Positions 21,201 through 53,270 of a DNA stretch of 64,000 nucleotides are shown here, piece by piece. The stretch's first letter is position 1. The number at the start of each line of letters is the position of its first letter. The notes under the pieces are model-generated. The model was not told the origin of the DNA. It saw only the letters and a program-made list of their open reading frames with translations, and did no database searches. Both the position numbers and the translations under genes were made by a program. The stretch comes from Phallusia mammillata. Its lineage: Eukaryota. The stretch spans positions 124,001 through 188,000 of the forward strand of contig OZ281494.1 in the NCBI GenBank assembly GCA_965637545.1, written 5' to 3'.

Positions 21201-24200
21201 GGCGCCCGAGCTATGACAACCGAGTCCAGGTTTTTGCAGCGACTGAGAGGGGTTTATACGTCGCATTTGGCTGAACTCTAGCCAAATGCAGGGTTACTTT
21301 AGGTTATTTGGGCCCGGCGTATTAATTCAAATATGACGTGATGTCAAAACTAATGTTGCGGCATATAAGGTTTGGTCAGTTACTAATACTAGTAGTAAAG
21401 TAGGCTTCGGTTTAGGCGTGAACTGGTTCTTGCAAAGTTAGTAAACAGCAGTCGATAAACAGGTAAAGTGGAATTGTAGAGCCTAGTTTAATTGCTTATG
21501 ATTTGTAAAATTGCCATGACAATCGGTTATAAAAACCGAACGTCAAAATTTGTAAAAAGTAAAAGGTATTTTGCGTTTATAGATACCTCAAGTTACTGAT
21601 GCTGTCTTGATGTGTTGTGGTATTGTGTTTGTTACATCACAATAACTAGGGTACAATCTTAATTGTTTCGTCACACTGCAGGATGTTGTTTGTTTCATTT
21701 TTCCGACAAATTGTTGAAGTGACATATGGTTTGGTTTGGTGACTTCTGTACAAAAACACCAACAATAGTTTTTACTGTATGTTTTTACTGTAATTCAAAG
21801 CCAGCGGAATGAAATGGTCGATGTAAGTTGAATAACGTACTTCATAATAAAATTCACAGTTCATGGCGATCAGTTGCTTTTGAAGAGCAGTTTGGCGCTC
21901 ACAGCCACCCTTTTCCGTTGAGTTTGTTTTTGCACGGTTCGTTGCGCATTGCGTTATAAAGCTCCGGGGTTAAGAAGGTTCGAAACTTATTATTGTCGCT
22001 CGTTGTTTGCTGGAATAAAGAATAAAGTTTCGAAAACAAAGTCTTGTTATTTGGGTTCGGCGCGAGTTCTTAAAACTCAGAAAAAAACAACTTCGACTTT
22101 GTCAGTGACCGCTTTGTTCATAAGAAGGTGTATTTTTTGTGCGAGTTTTTGTTTCAACAAAATTATAGGTAAGTTTAGTTGCGCCCGCTTTTCAATCATT
22201 TAAGCCTTAAATGATGAATTTTTTTGCTTAAATTTTAAGCAAAGAAAAATTGCGCAAGCGCTGGCTTCGACAAACGATTGTAGAGTGTCCATTGTCAAAT
22301 GTTTGCTGTTATTAACCGACAGAAAAAATAACGGTGTCGCGAAATTGAATCTGTTACTTGCGCTGTCAAGAGATTTTTTTCTGGATGACTGGTTGTGGCC
22401 GATGGTCTTGGTAACTATTGCGTCATACTGAGTGAGATCGCATTGCCGTTGGTAAAATGATCTGTAATTACGAACAGCCGCTGTAAGTTCGAAAGCGTGT
22501 AAGGTGATGTCGCTTGGGCTTAGCTTTTCCACATTGTTGTTGTGTGGCATGCGCTGAACGCGTGATAGCGGTGATATAAACGATATACCGGTAATGTTTG
22601 TATGCTGGGTTGGGGCAATACTCGTGAGACAGGAGTGATTCACACTTATGGCTTGAGTGCTTTACCAGGCGTGATCCCAAACAACTTTGTTTGTTAAAAC
22701 TCAAATTTCCGAATCAACGCGACGTTTACCATAATGTTTGCCTTACCTGACAACCGTATATAAGCTATTGCTGCCGGGTTTATAGAGCTCTTCTGGCAAA
22801 TGTATTTTATTCCGACGGTTTACCCTGATGAAGACGACCGGTATAGGACGCCGAAACGTCGAAATAAAAATACTCGCCAGAAGAGGTCTATAAACCCGGC
22901 AGCAATAGCTTAGCTTTAAATTTGATAACTATCTAATAAGATAGTATAGTTCGAGCTTTATGTTATACTTATACAGGATTATGCCATTTAAAATCTGTAC
23001 CTTTGATAACTTTTGATTTCTGTCAGAAGTCTTGCAAAATTGGTAGATTTTAAAAGCGTGTAAACGTGTCGTGTGTTTGATTTATTGTCCACGCATCTTA
23101 TTGTAATCGACATGCGTCAAAGAAAATCGTGTGACAACTAGTGAAGCGTTGGGTCACGTGTCTGCTCGTTTTATGCAGCAACCCTAGTTTTCTTGCGTCC
23201 ACCGGAAATCACACCGCGTGCAAGTTATGACGGTATGTTTTCGTTGCAGAAGCTACAACGCAATACACTGTATCATGTATTACTTGTAAGGACAACGCAA
23301 TAAGCACGAAATGACAGCATCTGTCTTGCCTGAATCGCACGGCGTCAACCCTTTCTCGTGGTTTCTTGTCAACGAAAATGAGCCCGACCGCTTTACAGGC
23401 CACCAACATTTTCATTTCCACAACACAACAGCAGCTACAGTACTTTCTCAGTTGAGCAGTATGACTAAAGGCGAGGCTAGCAGGACATCTAGCGGCGATG
23501 ATATCTTCCCGTTGCTACATGAAAACTACGAAGTTCTTGCATCACGAAGAAAGTCAGATCATGAGATCCCAGTGGCTGCAGACAACAGCACGGAAATTGT
23601 TGTAGCGGAAGCCATAAGCAGCGAGAGTGGTCGGTCATGCGTTGACAGCCAACAGCAAGAAAACCACGACGACACTCCTTGGTCGGGATTAACCGGTTAC
23701 ATCAAGAAATGTAAACAACGCAAGCGCTACAACTGCCTTCGTTGCGGGTCACCACTAGAACTTACCAAAAAACCCGCCGAGAAGTGTCGCATTGAAGCAC
23801 ACAACCAGATACAACGCAGCAAATCATGGCCAGGTACCTCAACCAGCAACGTCGATATAGCCAAGAAATCTCCTGAAAAGCAAGTTTACAAGTGTGGTAA
23901 CTGTGGGAAGCGCTACACCGACTTGACATTGTCAAAACGACTCAGAAAGCGATCGTTTTTCGCGCGCCGGATCAACGGGGTTCGACGGAGTATTACTTGG
24001 CCCTTGCCCATGGATTGCATTGACGAACTTGAAGAAAGCGAAGACGCCGTCACGTCTGTTACGTCACAAGACGGTGGCGATGACACGAATCAGTGGGTTA
24101 TTGTTAGACAACAAACGTTTTTAAAATAGAAGCCTTTTTATATCTCGGTCTATCACCTTGCTGCATAAACCCTGGATTCCACAAATGCTGTTGTTCAGAA

Positions 24201-27200
24201 CATAAGTGTTGATAAAAGTTGCCATTGTTTATGACAGTAATTTTGCTGTGAAATTATGGAGAAAATTAGGGCATTGTGAAAATTTTAAACCTTATATTCC
24301 CTACTGACATGAACTGTCTGATTGCTTGCCCTAGTTAAGGTGAGGTGAATTTAGGTAGTTTGCAAACACAAGACCACTTGGCCTGGGGCAAGTTATCCCA
24401 TTGTTTGTTGTCACCAAATCAAAGTTTGTACTTTAGACTTGTGAAGAGCCCCTGGGTATGAATTCTGCACTGTTGAAGGATGTTTAACCTTTGGCATCAT
24501 TGCACAACCTTTGTGCTGCAATCTGAACAGAAAAAACTGCTTACTGTTGAAAAAACAAGGATAAATATTGCTAGCGGTCCTGCACTAAACACAAACCACA
24601 AAACCACAGCCCTATTTGCCATTTTTTGTGAGTTAATTTTTTTTATGTTTTTGTTTTTATTTCAGGAGTCAGTCGAACTCTTCCCCGACCGATCTCAACT
24701 CATCTGGCAGTTCGATCAATGTTGGAAACAAAAATCAAATGCGGAAACAGTTTAGTAGCAAGAAGTTTAGTAGATGTTTGGCAGCAACCGTCCCTGAACT
24801 GGTGAAAATCCTTGGAGGAAAACATCCCATTGAAAAGGTAAACGCAACGCGATAGAATGAAAGTTTGAAACTGAAGGTCTCCTACTGACATCCTGCATAT
24901 GTTCTGTATTAAATTAGGCCTTCACTTGACTTGAAAAAACTTGTTGTTTTCAGGTGTTGATTGCCAACAATGGTATCGCTGCAGTCAAGTGCATGAGATC
25001 AATTCGGCGGTGGGCATATGAAATGTTTCGCAACGAGAAAGCCATTCACTTTGTTGCCATGGTGACACCTGAGGACTTAAATGCAAATGCTGAATACATT
25101 AAAATGGCCGACAGCTACGTCCATGTGCCTGGAGGTGCAAACAACAACAACTATGCAAATGTGGATTTGATAGTCGACCTGGCAAAGAGAACCAATGTAC
25201 AAGTAAGTAACAAGACTGATCATATAACATGATACGAAGGCATGCAAAGCTGCATGCAAAGCTGCATGCAAATGTGCTAAACTTTTAGTGACCAAGAGTA
25301 ACCTGCTCTGTGATAAACAAATGACACATAGTAACCTCAGACTATTTTAGAGCGTGTTGTTGTGTGTAGGAAATGATGACAAAGCATGCAGACATATATA
25401 AACTAGTTCATGCATGGTTTTCTTTACTTACATGTTTTACCAATTTTGCTTTGATTTTCAGGGTGTTTGGGCTGGTTGGGGTCACGCTAGTGAAAACCCA
25501 AAACTTCCTGAAAAGTTAAGCAAACTCAACATTGCCTTTCTTGGTCCTTCTGCTTCTGCTATGTGGGCATTAGGTACCTATCTCTCCCAATGTTTTCCAA
25601 ATAAAAAACAAGCAATGCAAATATAGTGAGATATCATACATTAAACTTTCTGTTGTATATTTATAGCAAAAATATTTATCATAATATCAAATTGTTAGGT
25701 TGTTTGTCAATACTTTTATTTTTTTGTAAGCTTTTTTTTAATCTTTTACAAATTATTTATGACACAAACTAAAGATAACAGCAACTTGATTTCCCTTTTG
25801 TAAGAGTAATCTGTAACCTTGAATTTTGTGTTTTAGGTGACAAAATTGCTTCATCGATAGTTGCCCAAACAGCAGGGGTTCCAACTCTTCCATGGAGCGG
25901 TTCAGGTTTAACGATAGCAAACAGCGTAACCAACGGCAACTCGGTGAACGGAAGTCCGGAAGATAATGTTTCTGAATCGAGCTCGAACAGCCAAAATTTC
26001 TGTGTACTCAGTGTTCCTGATGACATTTACTCGCAGGGATGTGTGGACAATGTGGAAGCTGCTATGAAGGTGGAGAGTGTTTGTTTAATTGATTTTTGTG
26101 TTGCAATAAGGGTGGCTGTGTTAGCTTATAGAGTGAAAGAAAACCAAAATTATGCAGATTTTCCTTTGAACAAAAATATTACCGCAAACAATATGGCACA
26201 ACTGGGAATATAATTTTTCTCCTATGAATTTAGCATACATAACTTACTTGTCATTTATGGTTGCATAACAATAGTTTTTGTGATTAAGGCTGCTTTGAAA
26301 ATTGGTTACCCTGTAATGATCAAAGCATCGGAAGGTGGTGGGGGTAAAGGAATCAGAAAAGTTGTTTGTCCCGATGATTTTCCTGCTGCACTCAGACAAG
26401 TTCAATCTGAAGTTCCTGGATCTCCAGTTTTTATCATGAAGTTGGCGACGCAGTAAGTTTGCTGACACAAGAAATATCAAGAAATAATAAAGTTTTGACA
26501 CTGAAAAAAACTGAGAATAGGTTTCACTGGAAATACAGTTATTCACAGTTATCTACCGATGCTTGTTATTTTGAGAGTAAGAAAGACAACATTAGTCTTG
26601 TTTTCCAGATCTCGCCATCTTGAAGTTCAGGTATTAGCCGACCAATACGGAAATGCTATTTCACTTTTTGGTCGTGATTGCTCAATTCAGCGTAGACACC
26701 AAAAAATAATCGAAGAAGCTCCAACCACTGTTGCTGGGAAAGATGTGTGGACCAAAATGGAGCAGGTAAGTTGAGAACAAGTTTTAAAATTGGGCTAGAT
26801 GTTGTTTTAAGTTGGGACATATTTGTAACATTGGTGTTGCTTTAAACCTGTTACATAGTACTTGTAATGTATTGGACAAGATGTAATCATTCCAAATACA
26901 TAAAACCACAATGAATTTTTCAGGATGCAGTTACCCTTGCAAAAATGGTTGGTTATGTAAGTGCAGGGACAGTGGAATATTTATACAGCGAAGATGGAAG
27001 TTATTCCTTTCTGGAGCTCAATCCACGACTGCAGGTAAAAATGTGATCAATTATTTATATGTTGGATACTTAATTGTGATGTGTGTTGTTTGGTTAAATT
27101 GTTTGGCTAGTAAGATTTGTGAATTATTTATGTATTAGGCATATGTGGATGCCAAACGTGTGTCAGTGACCTGTGTGTGGGGCAAGTTATGCAAATGACG

Positions 27201-30200
27201 CTGGTTACTTGGTGTGGTTTATTTCATGATCATCAGGACATTTACCAATGGTTATTTGCTTAAAGCTTGTTCTGTAGTTTATTATATGTGGATATGTGTA
27301 GTTTAATACATCCAGTTATATTTGATGCAAAAGTTTGAAAAAGATGTAAATTGTTTCAACTGCATTTTGCCTCCAAAAACTTGAATATACTTTACACCTT
27401 GACTTGTTTCTATAACAAACAAATTTCGCTCAAAGGTTGAACATCCTTGTACGGAGATGATCGCTGACGTCAACCTCCCAGCAGCACAACTTCAGGTTGC
27501 CATGGGAATACCTCTCTATCGAATCCGAGACATTCGAATCCTCTACAACGAAGACCCCTCAAGTGACAACGAGATTGACTTCACTGCGTAAGTTTGACAA
27601 CTGATACTGCTGGTTGTGTAACCTTACTTGTAACGGCTGCAGCATAAGCAATACAATACTCTTTCTTCATTTGTAAACTTGTCATTTAATTTTAGACCGA
27701 GACATACCCCTGAACCCCATGGTCATGTGATAGCAGCTCGCATCACAAGTGAAAATCCTGATGAAGGATTCAAACCCAGTGCAGGTAAAAAACTCTCATA
27801 TTGCTGTTTGGTTGCTTGAATGTTTTTCCATAAGTGCATTCGTAAAAAAAATATGTTTACGAATTGTGGCAGATTTCTATTTTTGCATAAAATCAGTTTT
27901 AAAAAAATTAATGTGTTTGTTCGCGTAAAAACGCTTAATGTTGAAGCAGGTTTTAATGCAAATATGCATCACAGTTGCACCCTATCACTTTGTTTCCATC
28001 GCAACAGTTTTGCAGGAAGCAGACCACCGGCGTTTTATCTGCCAGCGTATTGTTTCAATACAGACATTATATTCGTGTAACATAACACATCAGGATGTAC
28101 TGGTCGCGTTTCGCTGCATAAAATCGAATTTCCTTTAACTGCTGCAATTCGTTGTGTGGTCAAAATATTGTAATGCTGACTAAAACCCAAACAAACTATG
28201 TTTAGGGTGAAAAAAATGTGAAATTTGTAGCAAGCAACGGTTACCTACTTTATAATGTGCTTAGCCCAAAACTGATCATAAATATGCGTCTGTGCTTAAA
28301 TATTTTGCCCTTCCTGTGGTGGCTCAGATTCCTTGTAACGGCTCACTAAACCTATTGGTGAAGTTTTATGTTAAAGAATATCTGACGAACATTTTGTGGA
28401 AATCAAGCGTGGTTAACTGAGTTATTTCTTTCATCCAGGCACTGTACAGGAGCTGAACTTCCGAAGTAGCAAGAATGTTTGGGGTTACTTCAGTGTTGGT
28501 GCTGCAGGTGGTTTACACGAATACGCCGACTCACAATTCGGACATTGCTTTGCCTGGGGAGAAAACAGGGAATACGCAATATCGTAAGTAAAATATCCTG
28601 TCTGTTACAATTCAAGAATTCCTGCCGGTTGTGTTTGGAACATGGGTTACTTTAAAAAAGGCCTATGTAAAACTAATCTACTGAAGGTTGAACTGCATTC
28701 GGTGCAAATTAGCATTATTCATATTATTCTCACCTGTCAAAACAGGCCGCTTGGATTGTATTCGTTTGTGAACATGTTTCTTATTGAATTGTAATGATAT
28801 GTATAGTAGGGTTTCTCTCCCGGGATCCCGGGAATCCCGGACAATTTTAGCAAAAAATTCTATCCCGGGATTTTTTCTTTGTCCCGGGATATCCCGGGAC
28901 AAAAATTGAATGCTTTTTTAGTTGCACTCTTCAACCAGAGGTGCGACATCCACTGGGTTTCCGTGAATTAAAGTGTTCACCGAGGTTTCTTGCAACAATT
29001 CAAACAGGAATGATAAATAGTTCTGCTGTTGCGAACATTACAACAGTGTTAGAACCCAGTTAGTCAAATTCGCGCTATAGCTCTCCAGTTGGTAAAAATC
29101 TGGCAATTTGTAAAATTCCAAGACGGCGGTGTGGTTATAGCGCCATCGACGTGTGTCACAAGGTTGTGGGTTCTAATCCTATCTCAGTAGCTGGAACCTG
29201 ATGGGTTGAACTAAATTGGACTTACCAACTGACTAATTTGAAAACTGATTTCAACTTAAAAAAATATTCAATTAACTTAGAAAATAACAGGCTGCTCTAC
29301 GGTGGCCTTCTGAACATATTGCATTGATGCTTTGCCGGCCCACTAGAAATAAAAATGAAACAAACAAACTAATATTATAAATTTAACAAAAATCGAATAA
29401 TATCCCGGGATCCCGGGATTGAGGTTGTTTTTGTCCCGGAATCCCGGGATAAGCCAAAGTGGCAAATTTGAGAAACCCTAATGTATAGCTTCAATGTTGT
29501 AGACCAATTGTTGAAAAACGCACTTAAAATAAGCTAGTGCTGCCAGGCATGTTTAAATAAATGTATAACCGAGTATTGCTCATCCAGCAGTTTTATTATA
29601 AATAATCGACGTTTCGACGTCTCATTCAAGATGCCTTCATCAGGATAATGGCGTATCTTGCAAGACAAATTTCTTACAAAGCGACAATTGCAACAAATAA
29701 TAATTATGGTGACACAGAAACATGGTGATGGCGTTAAAGGAACTCTCGATTCGCGGTGACTTCCGCACGACTGTGGAATATTTAGGAAGGTTGCTAGAAG
29801 ATCCGTGTTTTCAGCAGAACCAGATCGACACCGCTTGGCTTGATCTACTCATCGCTGAGAAAGTGAAGGTTAATTAACTTTTTGTGGAATATTTATGGAA
29901 ATTCTGTGTTCAAGTATCATGTTAAGTGCGGGGTTTGTGCGAAACGAAAAGCCAAATTAAATTGGGGGAAACGGATCGGCTTTGTTTATTATGAGGATTT
30001 TTCCCACTATTTCATCATATAGATTGTAACTGTCCCCGTTGAAACGACCACGACAAGATTGTACTTCTGTGTGTTAGGTTATTGTTTGTTTTCTGTACAA
30101 ATCAAAACGACTTAGGTTAAAACGTCCTTGAGTAATTTTTATGAATTGCAAAATGGAAATACACACGACAATCCTTGCTCGTTCCAGTAAGCGCAAGAAT

Positions 30201-33200
30201 CGTCCTTCAGTGGTGAAATATCCGTGCTAACATTTAAACCAGGAACCTTGGTGAGAAGTTTCAAGGCAAACTTCCCATAAACGGCTGTGTTCGAATTTGT
30301 TTGCTGACAAAGTCCACGAAAGATTGAACCCGTTGCGCATTCAACAGACTTATGCGGTCTGCATGGGCAAACAACTCGTAATGTTTCTATTGCCCGGTAA
30401 ATTTGCACGCGCTGATTGGATTTATCTTATGGGTTTGTGCAAATACAAATATTTGTTGGCACATGGTCTGATTCGGGCAAAGGTTATTCGGGGATTTATA
30501 ATTAGATATTATTCTTACTTTTCAGTCAGAGCGTCCCTGCACCACAGTGGGTCTGGTCTGTACGGCTTTGCACATTGCAGACTCAAAATACCAGGCAAGA
30601 TTCGATTTCTACGTCAGTTCACTGGAGAGGTAAGAGCAGTTACAAAAACAAACACAAAGACAGGCATAAACAAACAAATAAGCACATACACGCATAAACA
30701 AAACACCTACAAAAACAAGCAAACGCACGCTCAAACAAAAAACAAGCACACACACACGCACAAATAAAAAACAAGCACACACAGGAATGAACAAAACACT
30801 CACAAAAACAAGCACACACACGCACAAATAAAAAACAAGCACACACTCGCACAGAAAAAAAACATGCCTTAAAATTGTAATGTGCTTGGCTGTCGAAACC
30901 CCAGCGGAGGTTATGTATTATTGATGACTTCTCGTAGTTCTGGCTGATGGCCTTTCACTGAACTTCCTCATACCCTCATGGTTTACACAGAGGAACACTG
31001 TTAGGTAAACTCACACGTACGCATGTTTCAGAGGGCAAGTTCTCACACCGACCAGCTTGAAGACAAGTGAATCTGTCGAGTTGATATCGGACGGTGTGAA
31101 ATATATTCTGGAGGTGACGAAAATATCTGAAACTTGTTACTACATCAAATGTAACAGCTGGAATATGGAGGTAGATGTCTACAGGTAAATATCACTTCCC
31201 CTCAACTGGTGTGGGTTTGAAACAGCACCACTGCTTGTTACACGTAATAAGTTGCAAACTATTCAGATTGGAAGGTCAAGACTTTTCGTTAAAATGTCCA
31301 AACCAATTGAGATCACCATACGTGTGACGTTTGTTATGTGAAATACTTTCCGAAATTAAACAAGAAATATTCTAACTTTGCTGATAAATACTGAAATATA
31401 CTCACTGGGTAATATATTGACCAACGCTGCAGTCGTTTCGTCCCCCTAAGCAAAATTGTACCAAACAAATCATGACATACCAACCAACATAGCTTGGTGT
31501 TCCTACATTCAAACCTTATCACATTTTTACATCAATATATTTCGCCGCAAGCACTGGGCTCGGTGGCGGAACCGGGTTCTACTTAACGTTAACATATTTC
31601 CTCAGACTCACAGACGGTGGTTTGTTGCTCTCATTGGACGGAATAAGTCGGACCACTTACCTTAAAGAAGAAGTTGACAAGTGAGTTATGTTTGTTTGAT
31701 TGACAGCTGTCAGTCACCACAGGACGTTACGTCATGCGTGTGTCACGTGATGGTTCCGGCTTTTTTACAACCAACCCATTTATCAATGACGATTATTTAA
31801 ATGGTGATAAAATGGATAAAAATTTTAATTTTTCTGTTTTGTTTCGGTTTATTGAACACAGGTTGGTAACATACTTTACATTGGTAGTTAATCTTTACCA
31901 TGTTTGAGTATTTTAGATTGTATTTGCAAACACCAAGTTTACAATGGTATGTTATTATGAATCCCCACCACCCACAAAGCGAGGTACAACAAATAACTTC
32001 CTCAAAACTTTCCAACTTTCAACATAACCTGAAACTCCACAATACGTAAATATCCCCAATAAACAAAAGCAATTACGTCCAAACAAAAATCCAGTTGACG
32101 AAAGCGACAACGTCAGAATGCTGATTGTTTCGACACACCATCATATTTCCGCTTTCTTTATTGTGTCTACGATTTCGAGAACGTCGCTATTGTCTCCAGA
32201 TTCCGCATCACAATCAACAATCAGACGAGCGAGTTCGAAAAGGAAAATGACCCGTCTGTCTTACGAGCGCCCTCCGCTGGCAAACTTATCAACTTTCTTG
32301 TAGCTGACGGAGCGCACGTGTTCGCAAGTGAGTTGGAATTATATCAGCTATTGCTGCCAGGCATAATATCAAGTTTGTAATGCTCTTTTGGCAAATGTAT
32401 TTTATACCGGCGTTTCGACGTCCTATACAGGTCGTCTTCATTAGGGTTAAAAAACAAAGGAACTTGAGAATTCTGGTTGGTAATCTAAAAACGATTCGAA
32501 AACACTCTTCTGCTGAAAATATTGTGGAAAACTTGGGAGTGTTTGGACTGGACCGAAAAATTGTCGTCAATGAAGTCACCTGACACCTTTCGTTTGTTCC
32601 ATTGTGACGATGAACAATAGGAGTGTTCTTCTTTTACATTATTGTGATTAAGTCACTTACATTATGTTGCCGACAGGTGTAACACAATACCTTCAAATGT
32701 TGCGCATACAGATATTCCAATACCTTATTATGCAGTTTCTGTTCCCCATGAGCTTTTGCTAAATATGTTTTTAAGCGGTTTCCTTCAACGGATTTTGTGA
32801 TATGCAACCATGTACATATGCTGTGTATGATAGGAATAAGTTTGACGCTGCTGCCAAAATTGTGAAACTAATTTAGTGACGAAGGTTTTGATTTTTCCTT
32901 GCGTAGACAACTTTTTGACCCACGACAACGTGAAACCATTCTCACTATCCGTCATAATGACATGTTTGTTACGTTGCAGGCCAGACATATGCTGAGATCG
33001 AGGTTATGAAGATGGTGATGTCACTGACAGCATCGGAGAGTGGGACTGTACATTACGTGAAGCGGGCCGGTGCTGTGCTGGAGGCTGGATCGATCGTGGC
33101 AAGGTAACACTGCCTTATAATTATGGGTCCCCTTCCCTGAAAAAAAATTTTTTAGCGCGGCTATTGTTCCCACGTTTTGGTCCAGAAAGAATGGTTCAAA

Positions 33201-42200: not shown

Positions 42201-45200
42201 GAAACTGTTGAAATTTCAACGCGTATGCGGCTCCCGAGTTATACATAACCAGTAACCACTATTGCCCGTGTTCGTGACACTCTTCGTAAGTAAGGCTTGG
42301 GGCTTTCTTATTATGGTATGTGGAAAATATTTAAAAGAAACAATCACAATGTTAGCCTAGGCTCCCGGTTACTAATATATACGAAGCGCGATAAAAATGT
42401 TTCATTCTTTCCACATACAAACGCTAAAATTGCGCATTTATGAGTTGGTACTACAAATCCATTGTTTGGTTTTTATGCAAAGAACATCTCGCAATTTCGT
42501 TATTTCTTGCCTTTCAGATTTCAACCGAGGAATTAGTTCTAAACAGTCAGGGTCAGCTGGCGAATATGAACAGACAACCCGGGGAAAACGAGGTGAGAAA
42601 CAAGTTTCATCGCACAAGTTGAAAATTTCCTAAACCGTGTAATTTTATACGTTTGTACCGCTACTGGCTCGGAATAAGTGTAAAAATCCTTACAATTTAA
42701 AGTTTCTGGCTTTTTAAATACTTGTACCTTAAACCTTAAGTAGGGCGAATAGTACGCTTCCATCGTGCAACCAATTTCATGTATTTTACCCAGTTTTTAC
42801 ACTTGCTTCCTGATGCCAATGCTGCAAAGGCGAATAATTATGGGTCCCCTTCCCTGAAGGGGACACATATTGTTTTTGTCCGTATTTTTTTTTTCTTTTT
42901 TCTTTTTTTCTTTTTTTCTTTTTTTCTTTTTTTCTTTTTTTCTTTTTTTCTTTATTTCTTTTTTTCTTTTTTTCCGTCTAACGCGGATTTGTTCCCACGT
43001 TTTGGTCACGAAAGAATGCTTCAAACTTTTTCAAATTTACACACATTACAGATATTGGTCTAAAGATGGTCCATGTGAATTTTGACCCCGTTTGAACCCT
43101 CGGTTCACCCACAGCCCCCCAAAACGTGAAATTTTTAGCGCGGATTTGTTCCCACGTTTTGGTCAAGAAAGAATGGTTCAAACTTTTTCAAATTTACACA
43201 CATTACAGATATTGGTCTAAAGATGGTCCATGTGAATTTTGACCCCGTTTGATCCCTCGGTTCACCCACAGCACCCCAAAACGTGAAATTTTTAGCGAGG
43301 ATTTGTTCCCACGTTTTGGTCACGAAAGAATGCTTCAAACTTTTTCAATTTTATACACATTACAGATATTGGTCTAAAGATGGTCCATGTGAATTTTGAC
43401 CCCGTATGACCCAGAGATTCACCCGCAGGCCCCCGAAACGTAAATGTGTCTAACGCTCGTTTGGTCAAGAAAGACACTGTAGGCAGAAGTACCAAGAGAG
43501 TAACTCACTGGTTTACGATAGCGGGAGGGCTCAGCTTGACGTCGGACAGACGTTTTACGAGACATCGTTTCAGTGATTAGAAATCAGCTGTTTTGCACAG
43601 CAATGCTATGTCGTTTTATTAAGTTATCACTCACATTTTTAGTTTTGGCGAAGGTTTTACACCTATGACGTGATTTAAGCCTAATAACCGTGCTTCGGTT
43701 TTGTATATGTCAAGAAAAACTTTGTTAATAAAAGTTAAGATGAAAAAATTAACTTGACTTTTTTGCCAAATAAATGTTTTTTTAAATGCTCGCTGTCAGG
43801 TTGGCCGCCGCATGATCACGGGTTACTTAAGGTCAACTAGTCGGTATTACAAACACAGCTCAGAACTTTCTTCATAACGTAGCGTTTTTTTAACAATCAA
43901 TTTAGGAGTCAATACTCAAGGCATGTATAAATTAGGCTTAACAGTATTGTTGCACACGAATGACGGCGTGCTATTGAAAACGGTGTCAAAAGGTCAAACA
44001 GTCGTTTGGCGTGTGCACCCTGAGAGGTTACTACAGGTCAATGGTACTCATTTTGCGAAACAAAGTTAAATGAAAAACAATTTGTTATGTATACACTTGT
44101 AGCAAATTGCTTTTTAATTTAAAGTGTCTGTAACACAACTGTTACAGCTTTCTAAAAAAAATTGCCCGACCTTGGAGGACTATATCTGGGTTAAAGCAAG
44201 AGATTAGATTTAAGTCTTTGTTACGTTTTTTTAATGTTTTTGTAATTACATGAATAGTGCAAAAAGAATACGAACAATTTTTTTTATTGTTGGGTTAATG
44301 CTTTCTAAAAATTTGTCCTTAAGAATGTAAAAATCACCGCAACATTTGTTTACCGTAAATCCGCACAAACATGCGTGTGGGGACCCATTAGTTTTTGTTT
44401 ACAAAAACAATCATATGTGTAGATCAAATGATGTGTATAGTAAATTGGTAAATATCGTATAGAATATATAAAATGGAAGTATATCAGAAAGCCACTCTTC
44501 TAGTATATATTTTAAATTCTCAAGGACGAATGCCCTAAAGTTTTTCATGAACTTTTAAATAATTGTTTTCAGTTCCGCCAATCGATAGCAAAGTGTCAGG
44601 TCAGTTGCAGAACTCTACCCAAACCCAACTTAATATTAAGTTTATAAAGTTCTTCTGACAAATGTATTTTTATTCCGACGTTTCGACGTCCTATACAGGC
44701 CGCTTTCATCAGGGTAAATAACACTGAATGCAACTAGCACAGTGCACGATAAACAAAGGAAAAACGAATGGAACGCAAGCACGTTTAACATGTCCCCATA
44801 TTTAACCACTTGTATTCCTCACAGATCGGGATGGTGGCGTGGAAGATGACTCTTCATACTCCCGAGTATCCGGATGGGAGGAAAATCATCTGCATCGCAA
44901 ACGACATCACCTGCAACATCGGATCATTCGGACCTGAGGAGGATCTCTTGTATCAGCGCGCGTCTGAACTCGCAAGACAAGAGGTGATTGTTTGTGACGG
45001 AACAGTACAACTAAATTAGCGGAGAATAAGAAATGGTTTCCAAGCAACAGAATGAGACAATGAATTTACTTGGATCATATTTCGTCTAACTTGCATCTTC
45101 AGTTACTACAGAGTCACAGGATAAAACAAAAGATGAATAAAATCAGCCAAGCACAACAAACGAAAGTGTAAAACCATTATGCTTAAAAACACTATACACG

Positions 45201-48200: not shown

Positions 48201-51200
48201 CGAATTAGGCGAATTTTAATATTAAGCTTGGACTTTATAAATTGTCAAATTGATAATAATCAATAATGGAAATTGACAAAAATTATGACACAAGCACAAA
48301 ACTAAGCATTGAAATTTATGAAATAACTCATATATTTATTTTTGCTTCAGGTTTGGTATCCGGATTCCGCTTACAAAACCGCCCAAGCGATCCTCGACTT
48401 CGACAGAGAGGGACTTCCCCTAATCATGTTCGCAAACTGGAGGGGATTTTCGGGCGGAATGAAAGGTGAAAAAAAAAACACTTTGTAACAATATTTTGTG
48501 TTAAACTATACTGAGGTTCGGTTTGAAAAACTTCGGATAATATTTGTTGCCTCGCTAATGGTATATTACAGTGGTTCCCAACCTTTTTCGTCCTGTTCAC
48601 CCTTTTGGTCGATATTCAAATCTAATCCCCCCCCACAAATTTAGTTTGCTACAATATCGTTTACATCAACAGTTTAATGTAATTCATAGAACAGAAATTT
48701 TCTTTTTTCTTAGCTCATATGTGGCAAATAACACATAGCACAGACGACCAGTAAAAAATTAAAATTGTGACATAAATTCCCCCCTTAGTTGGGAACCACT
48801 GGTTTATATCGAGTTATGTTTTTTTATAATTCAGTTTTATTTTCCAGACATGTATGACGAAGTGTTGAAGTTCGGCTCCTACATTGTGGACGCTTTACGG
48901 AAATATCGCCAACCTGTGATTGTTTACATTCCACCGCATGCCGAGTTAAGGGGCGGGGCATGGGTGGTGGTCGACCCAACCATCAATTCAACGTGAGTTT
49001 AAATCTAATCCACTTAATCTAATGTAATCAGTGGTGGGATTCAAATTTTTTGTCAGCCGGTTCTATCACAAAAGTCATACTTTTCAACCGGTTCTGTTAC
49101 AAAAAGTCCATTGACAGTCACCAGTAATGCTAACCGGTTTGCTGATCTCATAAAACTTCATGAGACGGTTCTATAGAACCGGTGCGAACCGGCTGAATCC
49201 CACCACTGGCCCACGTATATGTGCGGTATAAGGTGGAGGAAAAGGAGTAGAATTGTAAAAGCGAAATTGACCTCACACAACTTACTGGAAAAGTTTCAAG
49301 CAACATTTCGAAATCACAACTTTAAACTAAAACCACGAAAAATACACTTTAACATTTTTTACCAATGTTACAAACTGCGATAAAGGAAATATTACCAAAA
49401 TATTAAAAATACCTAAATATTAATAGCCTGAAACGAAATGTCAACATTGACAGCAATGCAACCTGCATTTCTCAACGGCAAAGGCGTAAACCGCATGTGC
49501 CTGTAAAACTTAAAACAATGAATACCTGGCGCGCAAATTCCAGGTGACGCCACAATAGCTATTGTGACGATCACGCCATCTGTTGACCTGAGGTAACCTT
49601 ATGACGTGGTGTGAGCAATGTTTGCCATTCCTGCTGTGTATAGGTACTTGAAACACCTGCAAAGCACCTGCCTGGCATTCTGCAATAATCCACAGGTTCA
49701 TGTAATATTCCCACCACACAAGAAAATGCGTTTTGTCATGACATAATGAAAATTTAGGGTTTCTTATGTGAATTTAGTTTGTCTTCTGGAGAATAAATGT
49801 CTGTGACGTATGTTTTTGACCTTGTGACGTCACATTGTTTGTTCCATTGCCTGGCTACGGCGCTTTATTTTATTCCACTTCTATTGTTGCGCAGACACAT
49901 GGAATTGTACGCCGACCAAGAGTCGCGAGGTGGCGTACTTGAGCCGGAAGCTACTGTGGAAATCAAATTCCGCCGGAAGGATTTGATTAAAACCATGAAA
50001 CGCTGCGATCAGGAATACGCCGGTATTTCATCCAAACTCGGTGAGTAGAAATTAATTTCACGCATAATATACAACAGCTACAAATACGAGCTTGTGCGGG
50101 TTGCCATGGCGACAGTTTTGTAAATGAAAATCTCTTTGGAACACCATACCGGATCTGTTCATAAGTTTAATGCTGTAACTAACGGCCCAAATAGGTGTAA
50201 AAAGCGACATGCTTTATTGTTCAAACGTTTTGGCAAATGCTCATCCCATCATCAGTGATATGAAGGCAACATCAGTTACACTCGTTTTTTTACAATCTAT
50301 TGTTCGCAGAAAACGAGGAACTCAGTGAAGCCGAACGAAAAACGTTGAACAATAAATTGAAAGAACGCGAAGATTATTTGGAACCGGTCTACCACCAGGT
50401 GGCGGTAGAGTTCGCAGACTTGCACGACACACCGGGTGGAATGCTGGCGAAGGGATGCATCTCGGTAAGCTGTGTGTTGTTAACTGTCGTCAGATTGTAA
50501 GCTGAAGGTTGCGGGTTCGAATCTTGCCACGTATTTCTATAATTCGCACGAAACTTGGATCAGTAAAAACATGATTTAATATTACAAACGTGTGGAAACT
50601 GTTTGCGTTGATCGTTGCAACATGTTGGATTAATTTGTATGTATGACGTTTCAAAGGTCATGCTTTTGTTATTGGTAATTAAATGCATTTCTACCCACCA
50701 AAATAAAATTGAAAATTAACATTATTTGAACAATTTTTGTTATGTTTACCTAAGAAGTGCGCCACGGGAGGAAATTTTAGCTCTGTAATGCCACTTTAAA
50801 CCGACAAAATCGACACCATGGCATAAAGTTCCCGCAGAGGTTCAATAATTTTTTTTAGTCAATGCGAATCCAGTCTTACAAACTGCGGATTCATGAACTG
50901 CAACTTTATTTTCTTCTCCCAGGGAATCTTGCAGTGGAAAACGAGTCGAAGTTTCGTTTATTGGCGACTTCGACGTTTGCTTCTGCAAGATGACGTGAAG
51001 AAACGATGTATTGGGATCAACAAGGATTTGACGAACGGACAGATCGACGCCATGTTACGACGCTGGTTTGTTGAGGACCTCGGCACTGTAAAGGTGGGTT
51101 GGTATAATCCTATGAGTGATACGTCCAGGCGTAAACTGTGGTGAAATTAAATGGGACATTTGAAGCATGCGATTTTTCGTCGCAGTTAAAACATTGCAAA

Positions 51201-52209
51201 ATAAAATGCCCTTATGAAAAAAACTACTACTTTACAAGTCAGAGGCAAAATCAGTCGTTATCGCGCGGTGTTTTCGTTGCGTTGTGACATGGTTGCGTTC
51301 AGTTCCTTTTCCTTTGTGTATGGTGCACTGTATACATTCAGTGTTATTTACCCTGATGAAGACGACCCGTGTAGGACGTCGAAACGTCGAAATATAAAGA
51401 CATTTGCCTGAAGAGCTCTTTAAAGTTTATATCATGCCTGGCAGCAATAGCTTATATTGGAAACAATGACGCTTTATGCTTTAATGGAAATTTCGTTCTT
51501 AGTTGAGCTGCTTTCTAATTCCGTTTAATCTTATACACCAAGTTTTGTTGTAACATTTTTTTCAGATGTTAGATTAAAGGTCGAAGTTTTGTGATAATTT
51601 TTTAAGTTTTGTGCAGTTCTCTGTTTGGCTTGTGTGTTGTACATTTAGATATTCAAAGTTGGCAACGTTTAATTCTTGAACCTCTTATTCGTTCAGGCTC
51701 ATCTGTGGGAAGACAACAAAGCTGTCGCTGATTGGCTTTCACTCCAACTTAATTCATCCAAAAACAAAACCGGATCGTCAATTCTAGAGGAGAACATAAA
51801 GATCTTACAACGAGACTCGATTTCGCAGCAGGTAACTTTCAAAGTTTGCAAAATATCTAAAGTTAGCGATGACCACCATCAAGGTTAACAATGTGTTTTC
51901 GTGTTCCATTTTATTTTGAGAATAAATTCTAAAGTTTTTCCACCAACGACACCCGTATGACTGTAACCTCCGAAGTGTGTAACAAACTTAACCTGGACTT
52001 TGTAACAAACACAAAATATTCCAACTAACACATTTAAATATCAGAATCTCACTCAGACTGTCGATAACCAACTGGAATATTTTCAGATCCGCCATTTATC
52101 GCAAACCAGCCCCGACATCGCTCTCCACTCGATGGTCCAACTCGCTCAGAGCCTCAGCCCGGAACAGCGAAAGGAAGCCGTGAAAATTCTAGAATCGCTA
52201 GAAACATAA
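18203..52209 (+). CDS. ACACA: Acetyl-CoA carboxylase (multidomain BC-BT-BCCP-CD-CT), ~45 coding exons
   Basis: First exon 18203-18360 ([19 protein letters not shown], like the ACC1 N-terminus) joins in phase to 24666-24837. Then [49 protein letters not shown], biotinyl EVMKM (Lys codon 33009-33011), [87 protein letters not shown]. Stop TAA 52207-52209. ACACA versus ACACB is not resolvable (single pre-duplication ACC likely). Confidence 0.96.
19379..20276. promoter_or_regulatory. Candidate enhancer or alternative promoter: CACGTG E-box cluster interleaved with CCAAT boxes in ACC intron 1
   Basis: ATCACGTGA 19379-87, TCACGTGA 19732-39, CACGTG 19902-07, ATCACGTGAT 20267-76; CCAAT/ATTGG at 19462, 19774, 19872. 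CpG-richer than flanking intron. Confidence 0.45.
20335..20483. mobile_element. 180-bp hAT MITE family, truncated copy 3 with an internal ~30-bp duplication
   Basis: Matches the right-hand part of the family, ending AAATCCCACCCCTG; GTAACAGAACCGGCTGAAAAATAT is repeated. Confidence 0.8.
22200..22643 (-). CDS. Hypothetical antisense ORF (147 aa, or 116 aa from MPHNNN) in ACC intron 1
   Basis: Open frame in a GC-richer island that is not repetitive within this window; no recognisable domain. Confidence 0.25.
   Translation of the reverse strand: MNHSCLTSIAPTQHTNITGISFISPLSRVQRMPHNNNVEKLSPSDITLHAFELTAAVRNYRSFYQRQCDLTQYDAIVTKTIGHNQSSRKKSLDSASNRFNFATPLFFLSVNNSKHLTMDTLQSFVEASACAIFLCLKFKQKNSSFKA
22762..22911 (+). 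ncRNA. Minimal hammerhead motif, family A copy 1, enclosed by a ~55-bp inverted repeat
   Basis: tttacc-CTGATGA(22825-31)-a-gacgacc-ggtata-ggacgcc-GAAAC(22853-57)-GTC. Inverted arms 22762-22817 and 22857-22911. Confidence 0.7.
23311..24129 (+). CDS. Orphan intronless 272-aa ORF with two CxxC knuckles, nested in ACC intron 1 (sense strand)
   Basis: 819-bp ATG-to-TAG ORF in GC-richer sequence; YNCLRCGS and YKCGNCGK motifs. Stops before any ACC exon. GTCACGTG at ~23153-23160 upstream. Confidence 0.6.
   Translation: MTASVLPESHGVNPFSWFLVNENEPDRFTGHQHFHFHNTTAATVLSQLSSMTKGEASRTSSGDDIFPLLHENYEVLASRRKSDHEIPVAADNSTEIVVAEAISSESGRSCVDSQQQENHDDTPWSGLTGYIKKCKQRKRYNCLRCGSPLELTKKPAEKCRIEAHNQIQRSKSWPGTSTSNVDIAKKSPEKQVYKCGNCGKRYTDLTLSKRLRKRSFFARRINGVRRSITWPLPMDCIDELEESEDAVTSVTSQDGGDDTNQWVIVRQQTFLK
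28807..29480. mobile_element. Non-autonomous hAT element, 674 bp
   Basis: TIR TAGGGTTTCTC / GAGAAACCCTA; perfect 8-bp TSD ATGTATAG (28799-28806, 29481-29488); subterminal CCGGGA(T) repeats at both ends. Confidence 0.92.
29120..29260 (+). mobile_element. tRNA-derived SINE-like fragment inside the hAT element
   Basis: A-box-like GGTGTGGTT and B-box-like GGGTTCTAATCC; related short fragment at ~850-895. Confidence 0.45.
29535..29648 (-). ncRNA. Minimal hammerhead motif, family A copy 2 (divergent, with compensatory stems) plus tail
   Basis: rc: ttatc-CTGATGA-a-ggcatct-tgaatg-agacgtc-GAAAC-GTC-gattatt; tail ends GCCTGGCAGCACTAGCTT. Confidence 0.7.
30643..30860. repeat. Degenerate AC-rich minisatellite (~26-bp unit AAAAACAAGCACACACACGCACAAAT)
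   Basis: Several imperfect tandem units visible; produces spurious low-complexity ORFs. Confidence 0.8.
32347..32450 (-). ncRNA. Decayed hammerhead motif, family A copy 3, plus tail
   Basis: rc: ccCTAATGA-a-gacgacc-tgtata-ggacgtc-GAAAC-GCC. Core mutated (CTGA>CTAA, GTC>GCC); family A tail present. Confidence 0.55.
33117..34357 (+). mobile_element. Helitron/Helentron-like non-autonomous element, subfamily 2, one core repeat
   Basis: 5' ATAATTATGGGTCCCCTTCCCTGAA, 3' subTIR GGGGACCCAT (34232-41), terminus AGCCACTCTTCTAGT. Closely similar to 42834-44504 along its length. Confidence 0.8.
34958..35312 (+). other. Non-canonical GC-AG intron of ACC
   Basis: CAG|GCGAGT donor. The junction restores PSLPLLELQ|[11 protein letters not shown] (vertebrate [20 protein letters not shown]). 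Confidence 0.88.
35102..35292. repeat. 44-bp minisatellite, 4 full units plus a partial
   Basis: Unit ATGACCGATAGTAACCCCGACCCCATTGATAACAACTCTCGTCC starts at 35102, 35146, 35190, 35234, 35278. Confidence 0.95.
38713..38897. mobile_element. Tc1/mariner-like MITE, 185 bp
   Basis: Imperfect TIRs CAGTAAAACTCGTTTAA / TTAAACGAAGTTTACTG, TA at the 3' flank; second copy at 47880. Confidence 0.7.
40527..40546 (+). promoter_or_regulatory. Triple nuclear-receptor half-site array (two overlapping DR1 elements)
   Basis: AGGTCA-A-AGGTTA-A-AGGTCA starting 2 nt into the ACC intron after the 40524 donor. Confidence 0.4.
41045..41362. repeat. ~20-25-bp minisatellite (TGTGATGTGATCTTGTGACTATTCA-like)
   Basis: More than ten degenerate tandem units ending next to the ACC acceptor at 41372. 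Confidence 0.9.
41659..41910 (+). ncRNA. Tandem pair of family B minimal hammerhead motifs preceded by an inverted tail
   Basis: Copy B2: CTGATGA 41724-30 ... AAAAC-GTT. Copy B3: CTGACGA 41844-50, GGCA/TGCC stem, GAAAC 41868-72, ATT. Inverted tail 41659-41706. Confidence 0.7.
42834..44504 (+). mobile_element. Helitron/Helentron-like non-autonomous element, subfamily 2, three 157-bp core repeats
   Basis: Intact 5' hairpin GTCCCCTTCCCTGAAGGGGAC, (TTTTTTC)n tract, 157-bp tandem units (~42981, 43138, 43295), 3' subTIR 44379-88, terminus CTTCTAGT. Confidence 0.8.
44640..44718 (-). ncRNA. Minimal hammerhead motif, family A copy 4
   Basis: rc: tttacc-CTGATGA-a-agcggcc-tgtata-ggacgtc-GAAAC-GTC-ggaataaaaatacatttg. 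Confidence 0.65.
45262..45310 (-). ncRNA. Minimal hammerhead motif, family C (single copy)
   Basis: rc: tgca-CTGATGA-t-gacaa-cagaga-ttgtt-GAAAC-GTC-cgca; 5-bp stem II; stem I TGCA/CGCA. Confidence 0.6.
46480..46738. mobile_element. Partial Charlie-like hAT MITE (one terminus only)
   Basis: Ends GGGTTGCCGACCCCTG (rc CAGGGGTCGGCAACCC); the other end is not recognisable. Confidence 0.45.
47281..47598. mobile_element. hAT-like MITE with CCCGA subterminal repeats
   Basis: Imperfect TIRs CAGAATTGTAAACGG / rc CAGAGTTGTTAGTCGG; degenerate 8-bp TSD CTCAGGTA / GCCAGGTA. Confidence 0.6.
47880..48215. mobile_element. Tc1-like MITE (second copy of the 38713 family) interrupted by a hAT MITE
   Basis: TA-CAGTAAAC start; the sequence aligns with 38713-38897 on both sides of the 47968-48146 insertion; 3' end truncated. 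Confidence 0.7.
47968..48146. mobile_element. 180-bp hAT MITE family, copy 4 (nested)
   Basis: TIRs CAGTGGTGGAATTC / GAATCCCACCATTG; TSD GTTAAAGC / GCTAAAGC. Confidence 0.9.
48569..48801. mobile_element. Charlie-like hAT MITE, 233 bp
   Basis: Perfect TIRs CAGTGGTTCCCAAC / GTTGGGAACCACTG; TSD degenerate. Confidence 0.8.
49029..49208. mobile_element. 180-bp hAT MITE family, copy 5
   Basis: Full TIRs CAGTGGTGGGATTC / GAATCCCACCACTG; no clear TSD. Confidence 0.88.
50152..50262 (-). ncRNA. Decayed family B hammerhead unit with full tail (copy 4)
   Basis: rc: tatca-CTGATGA-t-ggga-tgagcatt-tgcc-AAAAC-GTT-tgaacAATAAAgcatgtcgc...cattaaacttatgaacagatcc. Confidence 0.6.
51344..51455 (+). ncRNA. Minimal hammerhead motif, family A copy 5 (best-preserved core) plus tail
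   Basis: tttacc-CTGATGA(51353-59)-a-GACGACC-cgtgta-GGACGTC-GAAAC(51381-85)-GTC(51386-88). G10.1-C11.1 pair intact. Tail ends GCCTGGCAGCAATAGCTT. Confidence 0.75.
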
Positions 52210-53010: not shown

Positions 53011-53270
53011 GCCTGTGTAGCTCAGTTTTTCGAGGGCAAGTGCCGAAAAGACTCCTGTCGAGGGTTCGAATCCCACCGCTGGCTAGATGTTTGTAGCCTA
53101 TGCCTTGCCCATATGGTGGTGAATGCTTGGGAGACCAGCTGATTCGGTATAACGTCTTCAATGGGCCTGGCGTGTTATACTTTATTATGAGTATGCCGTA
53201 ATCTCTGGTCTGCATCGCCGCTTCAGGGCTGATCCCAGTATGAATGGATTTATCTTAGCTGGTAAAAAAA
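53011..53270 (+). mobile_element. tRNA-derived SINE with A-rich tail
   Basis: Head GCCTGTGTAGCTCAG...GGGTTCGAATCCCAC (A and B boxes, broken cloverleaf), ~190-bp body, ends AAAAAAA; possible TSD AAAATAGTT. Confidence 0.65.

What the first reader, a model, noticed from the sequence alone, without database searches (positions are those of the whole stretch)
22819..51397. Family A minimal hammerhead ribozymes scattered through ACC introns (5 copies) with covarying stems
Seen: copies at ~22825(+), 29640(-), 32440(-), 44710(-) and 51353(+) share C-CUGAUGA-A-[stem II]-GAAAC-GUC plus an AAUAAA-like tail ending GGCAGCAAUAGCUU. Stem II changes from GACGACC/GGACGUC to GGCAUCU/AGACGUC and stem I from CC/GG to AUC/GAU while staying paired, which argues for structure rather than chance. 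Known: CUGAnGA/GAAA/NUH is the hammerhead core; an extra nucleotide after A9 occurs in natural hammerheads; Penelope-like elements and retrozymes carry minimal type-I hammerheads with a palindromic stem III (here ACGU) that cleave as dimers. Inference: these are ends of an uncharacterised ribozyme-bearing retroelement family or a short non-autonomous ribozyme SINE; no RT is in the window. The 51353 copy is intact and sense to ACC pre-mRNA.
Basis: partly seen in the sequence, partly recalled or inferred. Interest (0 to 1): 0.8.

Follow-up and report, generated by a model that had tools for sequence, protein, structure and literature searches.

The report
Penelope retrotransposon ends carrying hammerhead ribozymes
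The five repeats are broken-off tail ends of an abundant Penelope-like jumping gene of a sea squirt, and each carries the small "minimal hammerhead" self-cutting RNA motif already known to sit in the terminal repeats of such elements, so the find is real but ordinary.

Summary
Five copies, plus a sixth inverted partial arm, lie at the stated places. A structure model built from other copies in the genome finds exactly these five at 58-72 bits.

They are not an uncharacterised SINE. They are 5'-truncated 3' ends of an autonomous Penelope-like element (PLE). A longer copy elsewhere in the genome shows:
- a partial tandem "pseudo-LTR" and an inverted 5' fragment;
- a 13-bp target duplication;
- the same hammerhead about 120 nt after the stop codon.

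Copies 186 nt to over 1.7 kb long all end at the same terminus. The core pattern occurs 1351 times in the 240-Mb genome, against 3 for a reversed control.

Stems I and II covary between subfamilies, but the commonest subfamily has an A.A mismatch in stem II. Two window copies are degraded: 32440 has core mutations and 44710 has lost its terminus.

The architecture matches the published PLE minimal hammerhead: 7-bp stem II, an unpaired base after A9, no helix III and a palindromic ACGU. The "AAUAAA-like tail" is the first codons of the element's ORF, and the conserved terminus is where insertions end.

Cleavage was not tested. Other agents of this scan reported the same kind of element elsewhere in this genome.

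The parts
22757..22820 (-). Inverted partial copy: the last ~77 nt of the element, including the terminus GGCAGCAATAGCTTATAT. It starts within ~7 nt of the hammerhead cleavage site and is joined head to head to the next part.
22819..22912 (+). 5'-truncated PLE 3' end, main subfamily (stem II GACGACC). Hammerhead motif at 22825-22860; core intact; A.C mismatch in stem II; about 20 nt deleted before the terminus.
29529..29648 (-). 5'-truncated PLE 3' end of the second subfamily (stem II GGCGUCU type, stem I AUUAUC/GAUUAU). Hammerhead at 29608-29643; core intact; one A.C mismatch in stem II; terminus with one change.
32340..32456 (-). 5'-truncated PLE 3' end, main subfamily. Hammerhead at 32409-32444 with CUAAUGA (G5 to A) and GCC instead of GUC, so it is predicted to be inactive. 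Terminus present.
44631..44790 (-). PLE 3' fragment truncated at both ends. It extends ~75 nt upstream of the hammerhead (44677-44712) and lacks the last ~24 nt. G10.1 is changed to A.
51232..51457 (+). Longest window copy (226 nt). It runs from the element's stop-codon region through the hammerhead (51353-51388) to the terminus. The core is intact and the second stem I pair is lost. It lies in sense orientation inside an ACC intron, between the exon ending ~51141 and the exon starting ~51697.

Best explanation
**What they are.** The five copies are dead, 5'-truncated insertions of an autonomous Penelope-like retrotransposon of the host. The host is an ascidian, most likely Phallusia mammillata.

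**The element.** The full unit is about 2.57 kb. [quoted passage not shown] Insertions are target-primed, end at a fixed terminus (...GGCAGCAATAGCTTATAT) and are usually truncated at the 5' end. Some carry an inverted or partial-tandem extra piece, the pseudo-LTR.

**The hammerhead.** The last ~105 nt of every copy holds a minimal type-I hammerhead:
- a short stem I;
- CUGAUGA, one unpaired A and a 7-bp stem II;
- GAAA followed by ACGU-C, with no helix III of its own.

**How it would work (inferred).** From the literature, such a motif can cut after GUC only when two copies pair through the palindromic ACGU, or when the element's protein assists. Its likely role is processing of the element's long or tandem transcript.

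**Reading frame.** In the main subfamily the AUG inside CUGAUGA opens the element's reading frame. A second in-frame AUG sits in the conserved terminus. The conserved 'tail' is therefore the start of the ORF and the site where insertions end. That reverse transcription starts there is inferred by analogy with PAc, not shown here.

**Effect on the host.** The window copies are single and partly mutated. They are expected to be inert passengers in the ACC gene.
For: **Abundance and shape of the family**
- The motif is strongly over-represented: 1351 genomic hits against 3 for the reversed control, and about 1850 BLAST candidates.
- Copies have a sharp common 3' end and variable 5' ends.
- 29 sampled copies are collinear with the long element at 89-100% identity. 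Their lengths run continuously from 186 to over 1699 nt.

**The long copy, L034**
- It has an inverted 86-nt fragment, a partial pseudo-LTR and a full unit, flanked by the 13-bp duplication ATGCTATTGTAGT.
- The ORF hits RVT_1 (E 5e-5) and GIY-YIG (E 5e-3).
- Visible motifs are YVDD and GVVYSIPCAECPLIYIGETGRSLNTRRKEH.
- The C-terminus matches T4 endonuclease II, a GIY-YIG enzyme, at E 0.01.
- There are over 4000 homologues, many carrying PF00078 + PF01541.

**Link between hammerhead and RT**
- At 11 or more loci the hammerhead lies 113-162 nt downstream of an RT match.

**Structure**
- 73.6% of cells are paired, against 32-53% with slid partners.
- The covariation score is 0.245, against 0.05-0.13 for slid partners, and 0 of 500 shuffles reach it.
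- The core is retained between subfamilies whose RTs are only about 58-65% identical.

**Match to the published description**
- The architecture equals the published PLE min-HHR: 7-8 bp helix II, an unpaired nucleotide 5' of stem II, palindromic 15.2-16.2, and opposed pairs 100-700 bp apart (PMC4209133).
- Insertion structures match PMC8557442.
- An ORF start inside the hammerhead and RT initiation about 110 nt into the ORF were shown for a lizard PLE (PMC11167929). Here the distance from the AUG to the terminus is about 100 nt.
Against: - No Rfam hammerhead model hits these copies, even at E 10. This is expected for a motif without helix III, but it is still a failed formal test.
- The commonest subfamily has an A.A mismatch in stem II (46 of 64 distinct copies).
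- Stem I is weak: 63% of cells are paired.
- Thermodynamic folding does not single out the hammerhead fold or the ACGU dimer.
- No evidence of cleavage was obtained. The available runs are contigs only and show no ends.
- The Pfam scores for RT and GIY-YIG in the copy examined are below the curated cut-offs.
- The PLE clade was not placed by phylogeny.
Confidence: 0.9

Rival explanations
1. The short copies belong to a separate non-autonomous, non-coding hammerhead element (an animal 'retrozyme' or ribozyme SINE). It would be mobilised in trans by Penelope enzymes rather than being truncated copies of the autonomous element.
For: - Most copies are short, and about 1350-1850 copies compare with about 1400 RT candidates.
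- Other agents of this scan reached this reading for other hammerhead families in the same genome.
- A preprint derives animal retrozymes from PLE pseudo-LTRs.
Against: - Sampled copies align without a break to the autonomous element, from its 3' terminus up into the ORF.
- 5' ends are spread continuously from 186 to over 1699 nt. There is no discrete unit length and no short tandem arrays.
- The 51353 copy reaches the ORF stop codon region.
Confidence: 0.06
2. The hammerhead-like boxes are conserved for reasons other than catalysis, and the RNA never cuts itself. Possible reasons are that they encode the first residues of the ORF ([12 protein letters not shown]...) or that they form the protein-binding or RT-initiation region.
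For: - In the main subfamily the motif is in frame with the ORF.
- Published metazoan PLE min-HHRs cut poorly in vitro.
- Cleavage was dispensable for insertion in vitro.
- Some very successful PLE clades lack the motif.
Against: - In the second subfamily the frame from the CUGAUGA AUG closes after 15 codons, yet the core and the paired stems are kept.
- The stems covary.
- The lizard PLE hammerhead does cleave when its protein is present, and core mutations with their compensation behave as expected for a ribozyme.
Confidence: 0.04
3. The sense-strand copy in the ACC intron has been co-opted, for example to cut or regulate ACC pre-mRNA.
For: The core is intact and the copy is in sense orientation inside an intron.
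Against: - It is a single copy with no helix III and no partner nearby in the same orientation.
- Its stem I is weakened and it is about 15% diverged from young copies.
- Thousands of equivalent copies lie elsewhere.
- A preprint reports selection against genic insertion of related elements.
Confidence: 0.01

Closest known systems
Minimal hammerhead ribozymes (min-HHR) of metazoan Penelope-like elements (Cervera & de la Pena 2014, PMC4209133)
   Same: - Type-I topology and the CUGAUGA / GAAA / UC core.
- A long (7-bp) stem II closed by G10.1-C11.1.
- One unpaired nucleotide between A9 and 10.1.
- No helix III, with a palindromic 15.2-16.2 (ACGU).
- A short stem I.
- Location in the pseudo-LTR.
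- Thousands of mostly solitary copies, and opposed pairs a few hundred bp apart.
- Consensus subfamilies with compensatory changes.
   Different: - The host is a tunicate, a group not named in that paper's main text.
- The commonest subfamily tolerates an A.A mismatch in stem II.
- No activity data exist for this family.
Canonical endonuclease-bearing PLEs (Penelope/Poseidon, Neptune clades), e.g. PAc of Anolis (Frangieh et al. 2024, PMC11167929)
   Same: [quoted passage not shown]
- Partial tandem and inverted insertions, and a target duplication.
- The ORF opens at the AUG inside the hammerhead box.
- Genomic copies end about 100 nt into the ORF. In PAc, RT initiation is 111-118 nt in.
   Different: - The unit is short (~2.57 kb).
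- A second in-frame AUG lies in the terminus. It is conserved in a sister subfamily in which the first AUG's frame is closed.
- The clade was not determined.
Metazoan non-LTR retrozymes (Cervera & de la Pena 2020, PMC7229834)
   Same: - Type-I hammerheads that need two copies to cut.
- A link to PLE pseudo-LTRs.
   Different: Retrozymes are short tandem non-coding units that give circular RNAs and carry canonical hammerheads with loop-loop contacts. Here the copies are solitary, collinear with a coding element, and carry the minimal motif.

Membership tests
Hammerhead ribozyme, PLE min-HHR variant | Catalytic core C3-U4-G5-A6-N7-G8-A9 ... G12-A13-A14 ... A15.1/U16.1-H17 | tested here: met
   The core is exact in 4 of 5 window copies. 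The 32440 copy has G5 changed to A and U16.1 changed to C. There are 1351 exact cores genome-wide against 3 in the control.
Hammerhead ribozyme, PLE min-HHR variant | Stem II of 6-8 bp closed by G10.1-C11.1, with an unpaired nucleotide between A9 and 10.1 | tested here: met
   The stem has seven pairs, and 82.5% of cells are paired across 64 distinct copies. The G-C closing pair is present in 51 of 64, and the bulged A is nearly invariant. Pair 5 is A.A in 46 of 64.
Hammerhead ribozyme, PLE min-HHR variant | No helix III of its own; palindromic 15.1-16.1 tetrad allowing a dimer | tested here: met
   GAAA-CGU-C gives ACGU with no loop in every copy. Dimer formation itself is not shown, and cofold was uninformative.
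Hammerhead ribozyme, PLE min-HHR variant | Stem I pairing across the cleavage site, supported by covariation | tested here: inconclusive
   63% of cells are paired. The two pairs next to the core covary (C-G 40 / U-A 14; C-G 52 / U-A 4), but the outer pairs are poor.
Hammerhead ribozyme, PLE min-HHR variant | Match to a curated Rfam hammerhead model | tested here: not met
   There is no hammerhead hit at gathering score or at E up to 10. The Rfam models require a helix III that this variant lacks.
Hammerhead ribozyme, PLE min-HHR variant | Site-specific self-cleavage after H17 | not testable with these tools
   Only assembled contigs of probable RNA runs were available, and they carry no end information.
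Penelope-like element (endonuclease-bearing) | Reverse transcriptase domain | tested here: met
   RVT_1 scores E 3e-5 to 1.5e-4 in three copies, below Pfam's cut-off. The YVDD and QGTAMGSP motifs are visible. Over 4000 homologues exist at E down to 1e-168, most with PF00078.
Penelope-like element (endonuclease-bearing) | C-terminal GIY-YIG nuclease | tested here: met
   The motif GVVY...CAEC...YIGET...R..EH sits at residues ~487-520 of the 591-aa piece. Pfam GIY-YIG scores E 0.005 and T4 endonuclease II E 0.01. Homologues carry PF01541.
Penelope-like element (endonuclease-bearing) | Pseudo-LTR from partial tandem insertion, often with an inverted 5'-truncated copy; target-site duplication | tested here: met
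   L034 has an inverted 86-nt fragment, a partial pseudo-LTR and a full unit between 13-bp duplications. Head-to-head pairs occur at many loci and in the window at 22757-22912.
Penelope-like element (endonuclease-bearing) | Placement within the PLE clade in an RT phylogeny with reference elements | not tested
Metazoan non-LTR retrozyme | Short non-coding units in tandem, each with a hammerhead, giving unit-length circular RNA | tested here: not met
   The window copies are solitary and collinear with the coding element. Copy lengths are continuous and no short tandem arrays were seen. Circular RNA was not testable.

The most novel reading that the evidence does not exclude
In this tunicate PLE lineage the hammerhead sits between two in-frame start codons. 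One is the AUG inside the CUGAUGA box. The other lies 26 codons downstream, in the conserved terminus (ATGCCTGGCAGC..., read as MPGSNSL).

Self-cleavage would then act as a switch. Uncut RNA would be translated from the first AUG. Cut RNA would begin 47 nt before the second AUG and could serve as a shorter mRNA or as the template.

The terminus is conserved between subfamilies whose RTs differ by about 35-40%. On this reading that is because it serves at once as the ORF start and as the reverse-transcription start site.
Probability: 0.2. Interest if true: 0.45.

Novelty: new member of a known kind. Interest (0 to 1): 0.2.

Why it matters
- It assigns a repeat family of over a thousand copies in an ascidian genome to a known class, and so removes it from the list of unexplained structured RNAs.
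- It corrects the annotation of the "tail": this is the coding start and RT initiation region, not a poly(A) signal.
- It adds a chordate-invertebrate example in which the PLE reading frame opens inside the hammerhead, as in the lizard element studied biochemically.
- For the ACC gene the copies are most likely neutral intronic passengers.

Tried and rejected
- **Rfam scans.** Scans of the window at gathering score, and of 20000-54000 at E up to 10, gave no hammerhead family.
- **L031 tandem array.** The 3.27-kb tandem array first looked like full-length tandem elements. It has no ORF of 150 aa or more and is a segmental tandem repeat that merely contains one copy per unit.
- **L033.** Its long '945-aa ORF' runs through a 200-N assembly gap and was not used as a gene model.
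- **Folding.** Monomer and dimer folding with ViennaRNA did not single out the hammerhead or the ACGU dimer.
- **Expression.** Four probable RNA runs hold contigs covering the whole element. They are assemblies of unrecorded library type, so neither transcription nor cleavage ends can be claimed.
- **Target duplications.** None could be recognised around the old window copies.
- **Second-subfamily full-length copies.** The link between that subfamily's pseudo-LTR and a 58%-identical RT therefore rests on coordinates only.
- **What was built.** No full-length consensus or repaired ORF was made. Only a 50-position profile of the ribozyme motif was made.
Full report
**1. The observation**

Reading the five places shows the shared string: short stem I, CUGAUGA, A, a 7-nt arm, a 6-nt loop, a 7-nt arm, GAAACGUC. 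About 90 nt later comes ...GGCAGCAATAGCTT.
- The core pattern has 5 hits in the window, four of them these copies (the fifth is 10075(+); 32440 fails the pattern), against 0.01 expected.
- The terminal 13-mer has 6 hits against 0.83 expected.
- A sixth, inverted arm at 22757-22820(-) abuts the 22825 copy head to head.
- No Rfam family reaches threshold. Even at E up to 10 no hammerhead model matches.

**2. Scale in the genome**

The window is C1:124001-188000 of a 240-Mb assembly.
- BLAST with the 51353 copy gives about 1850 first-look candidates. BLAST with the 29640 copy gives about 900.
- The core pattern CTGATGA-N18-30-GAAACGTC occurs 1351 times, against 3 for the reversed control.
- I took a positional sample: a subset of the first 100 hits along chromosome 1, fetched by coordinate, plus the window copies. 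It gave 64 distinct sequences.
- A covariance model built from them finds exactly the five window copies at 58-72 bits. The next hit is at 17.9 bits. Four of the five window copies were in the model's training alignment, so only 32440 is an independent detection.
- In the whole genome the best 150 hits all score 75 bits or more, and many are identical, which indicates recent amplification.

**3. What the copies are**

Copies share a sharp 3' end and differ in their 5' ends. Two loci extended into long ORFs.

The cleanest is L034 (C4:14246000-14254000, minus strand). Reading 5' to 3' it holds:
- the genomic flank ...ATGCTATTGTAGT;
- an inverted 86-nt fragment of the terminal region;
- a partial sense copy, starting inside CUGAUGA and running to the terminus;
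- a full unit of about 2.57 kb, ending in the same hammerhead and terminus;
- the same 13 bp ATGCTATTGTAGT again, i.e. a target-site duplication.

The ORF evidence is as follows:
- In this copy the ORF is split by one stop into 227 + 591 codons.
- It hits RVT_1 (E 5e-5) and GIY-YIG (E 5e-3).
- It shows YVDD and GVVYSIPCAECPLIYIGETGRSLNTRRKEH.
- Its C-terminus matches T4 endonuclease II, a GIY-YIG enzyme (E 0.01).
- It has over 4000 homologues at E down to 1e-168, with PF00078 and often PF01541. One is a 97%-identical Phallusia mammillata protein, which names the probable host.

Further links between hammerhead and RT:
- A search of the genome with this protein gives about 1400 candidates in three identity groups: 85-100%, 58-66% and about 42%.
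- At 11 or more loci a top-scoring hammerhead lies 113-162 nt downstream of the RT match.
- Twenty-nine sampled copies align to the L034 element at 89-100% identity. All end at element position 2782-2788, except L026 (the L034 locus itself) and L023, where the match runs on into flank. Their lengths spread continuously from 186 to over 1699 nt.

This is 5' truncation of an autonomous element, not a discrete SINE.

The window copies map to the same 3' region:
- 51232-51457 begins at the stop-codon region.
- 44790-44631 lacks the last ~24 nt.
- The other three begin a few nt before the hammerhead.
- No RT-coding fragment is in the window.

**4. Structure**

On the 64 distinct copies the named structure (6-bp stem I, 7-bp stem II) behaves as follows:
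- 73.6% of cells are paired, against 32-53% when partners are slid.
- The covariation score is 0.245, against 0.05-0.13 for slid partners. None of 500 shuffles reaches it. The shuffle count is not a probability, because the copies are related.
- Stem II is 82.5% paired. True two-sided changes occur at pair 3 (C-G 58, U-A 5) and pair 2.
- Pair 5 is an A.A mismatch in 46 of 64 copies, that is, in the two commonest subfamilies.
- In stem I the two pairs nearest the core covary (C-G/U-A). The outer pairs are weak.

Subfamilies are visible:
- GACGACC and GGCGACC, both with the A.A mismatch;
- GGCGUCU, fully paired, the type of the 29640 copy;
- GGUGUCU/GGACAUC, compensated;
- an unrelated stem, GCCCUACC/GGUGGGC, with the same core.

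The core is therefore kept across lineages whose RTs are only about 58-65% identical. This is the relevant sign of constraint, since individual dead copies decay neutrally, as the 32440 copy shows.

**5. Reading frame and the 'tail'**

In the main subfamily the AUG inside CUGAUGA is in frame with the ORF. The reading [34 protein letters not shown]... then runs on into the RT protein.
- The 'AAUAAA-like' stretch is the codons GGA-AUA-AAA.
- The conserved terminus contains a second in-frame AUG (MPGSNSL).
- In the second subfamily the first frame closes after 15 codons, but the terminus AUG and its codons are kept.
- Genomic copies thus end about 100 nt into the ORF.

**6. Comparison with the literature**

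- Cervera and de la Pena (PMC4209133) describe exactly this architecture in metazoan PLE pseudo-LTRs. They report a 7-8 bp helix II, a short helix I, an unpaired nucleotide 5' of stem II, palindromic 15.2-16.2, thousands of mostly solitary copies, opposed pairs 100-700 bp apart, low activity in vitro and predicted dimer action.
- Craig et al. (PMC8557442) describe the partial tandem, inverted 5' copy and tail structures.
- Frangieh et al. (PMC11167929) show several things for a lizard PLE. The ORF starts in the hammerhead. Reverse transcription starts 111-118 nt into the ORF, which explains where genomic copies end. The hammerhead cuts only with the element's protein present. Cleavage is dispensable for insertion in vitro.

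No paper in the held library links Phallusia to Penelope elements. Tunicates are not named in the main text of the first or second paper.

**7. Host gene**

ACC domain exons lie on the + strand:
- biotin carboxylase at 24951-27040;
- ACC_central at 34805-41601;
- carboxyltransferase at 46227-50470;
- C-terminal exons at about 50925-51141, 51697-51840 and 52006-52206.

The 51353 copy is therefore intronic and in sense orientation. The 44710, 32440 and 29640 copies lie between coding exons on the antisense strand. The 22825 pair lies 2.1 kb upstream of the first detectable domain exon, so its intron status is unverified.

**8. Expression**

Contigs from four probable RNA runs of the same organism cover the whole element. 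The library types are not on record, and contigs show no ends, so nothing can be said about cleavage.

**9. Verdict**

It is wrong, or unnecessary, as to a new SINE and the poly(A)-like tail.
- This is a new member of a well-described kind.
- Other agents of this scan reported the same kind of element on other pieces of this genome. I reached the reading before seeing those notes. For this family I differ from the 'non-coding retrozyme' wording, because the copies are collinear with a coding element.

Noticed in passing
window 45267-45312 (-): A weak further hammerhead-like site: CUGAUGA-U, a 5-bp stem and GAAACGUC. It scores 17.9 bits (E 0.005) with my model and has poor stem I pairing. It may be a decayed copy from another PLE family.
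   Followed up: partly
window 10075-10103 (+): Another CUGAUGA...CGAAAC match with no obvious stem II. It is not found by the model and may be chance.
   Followed up: no
window 53011-53084 (+): A tRNA-like sequence at 25.3 bits, below Rfam's gathering score of 29. It has a good T arm and could be a tRNA pseudogene or a tRNA-derived repeat downstream of ACC.
   Followed up: no
window 53756-54601 (+): An open frame of 282 codons starting ...MSVNIQMEFAVEMSCEACSDSITKVLKEK, with an MxCxxC metal-binding motif. From memory it resembles a copper chaperone (CCS/ATX1-like) gene just downstream of ACC.
   Followed up: no
L031 (G000:C4:20953500-20963499): A 3.27-kb unit repeated in tandem at 99% identity. 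Each unit contains one family A hammerhead copy but no ORF of 150 aa or more. It is a segmental tandem repeat rather than tandem elements.
   Followed up: partly
G000:C2:24754375-24761335 (+): Three RT matches of the 63%-identity group, spaced exactly 2600 bp apart. Each has a 799-codon open frame without stops. This is a tandem array of a second, apparently young PLE family.
   Followed up: no
L034:3103-3125 (-) and window 51436-51457, 32340-32361, 29529-29550: The conserved terminus holds an ATG in frame with the element's ORF (MPGSNSL). It is kept in both the main and the second subfamily.
   Followed up: partly
My family A model does not detect it at E up to 10.
   Followed up: no
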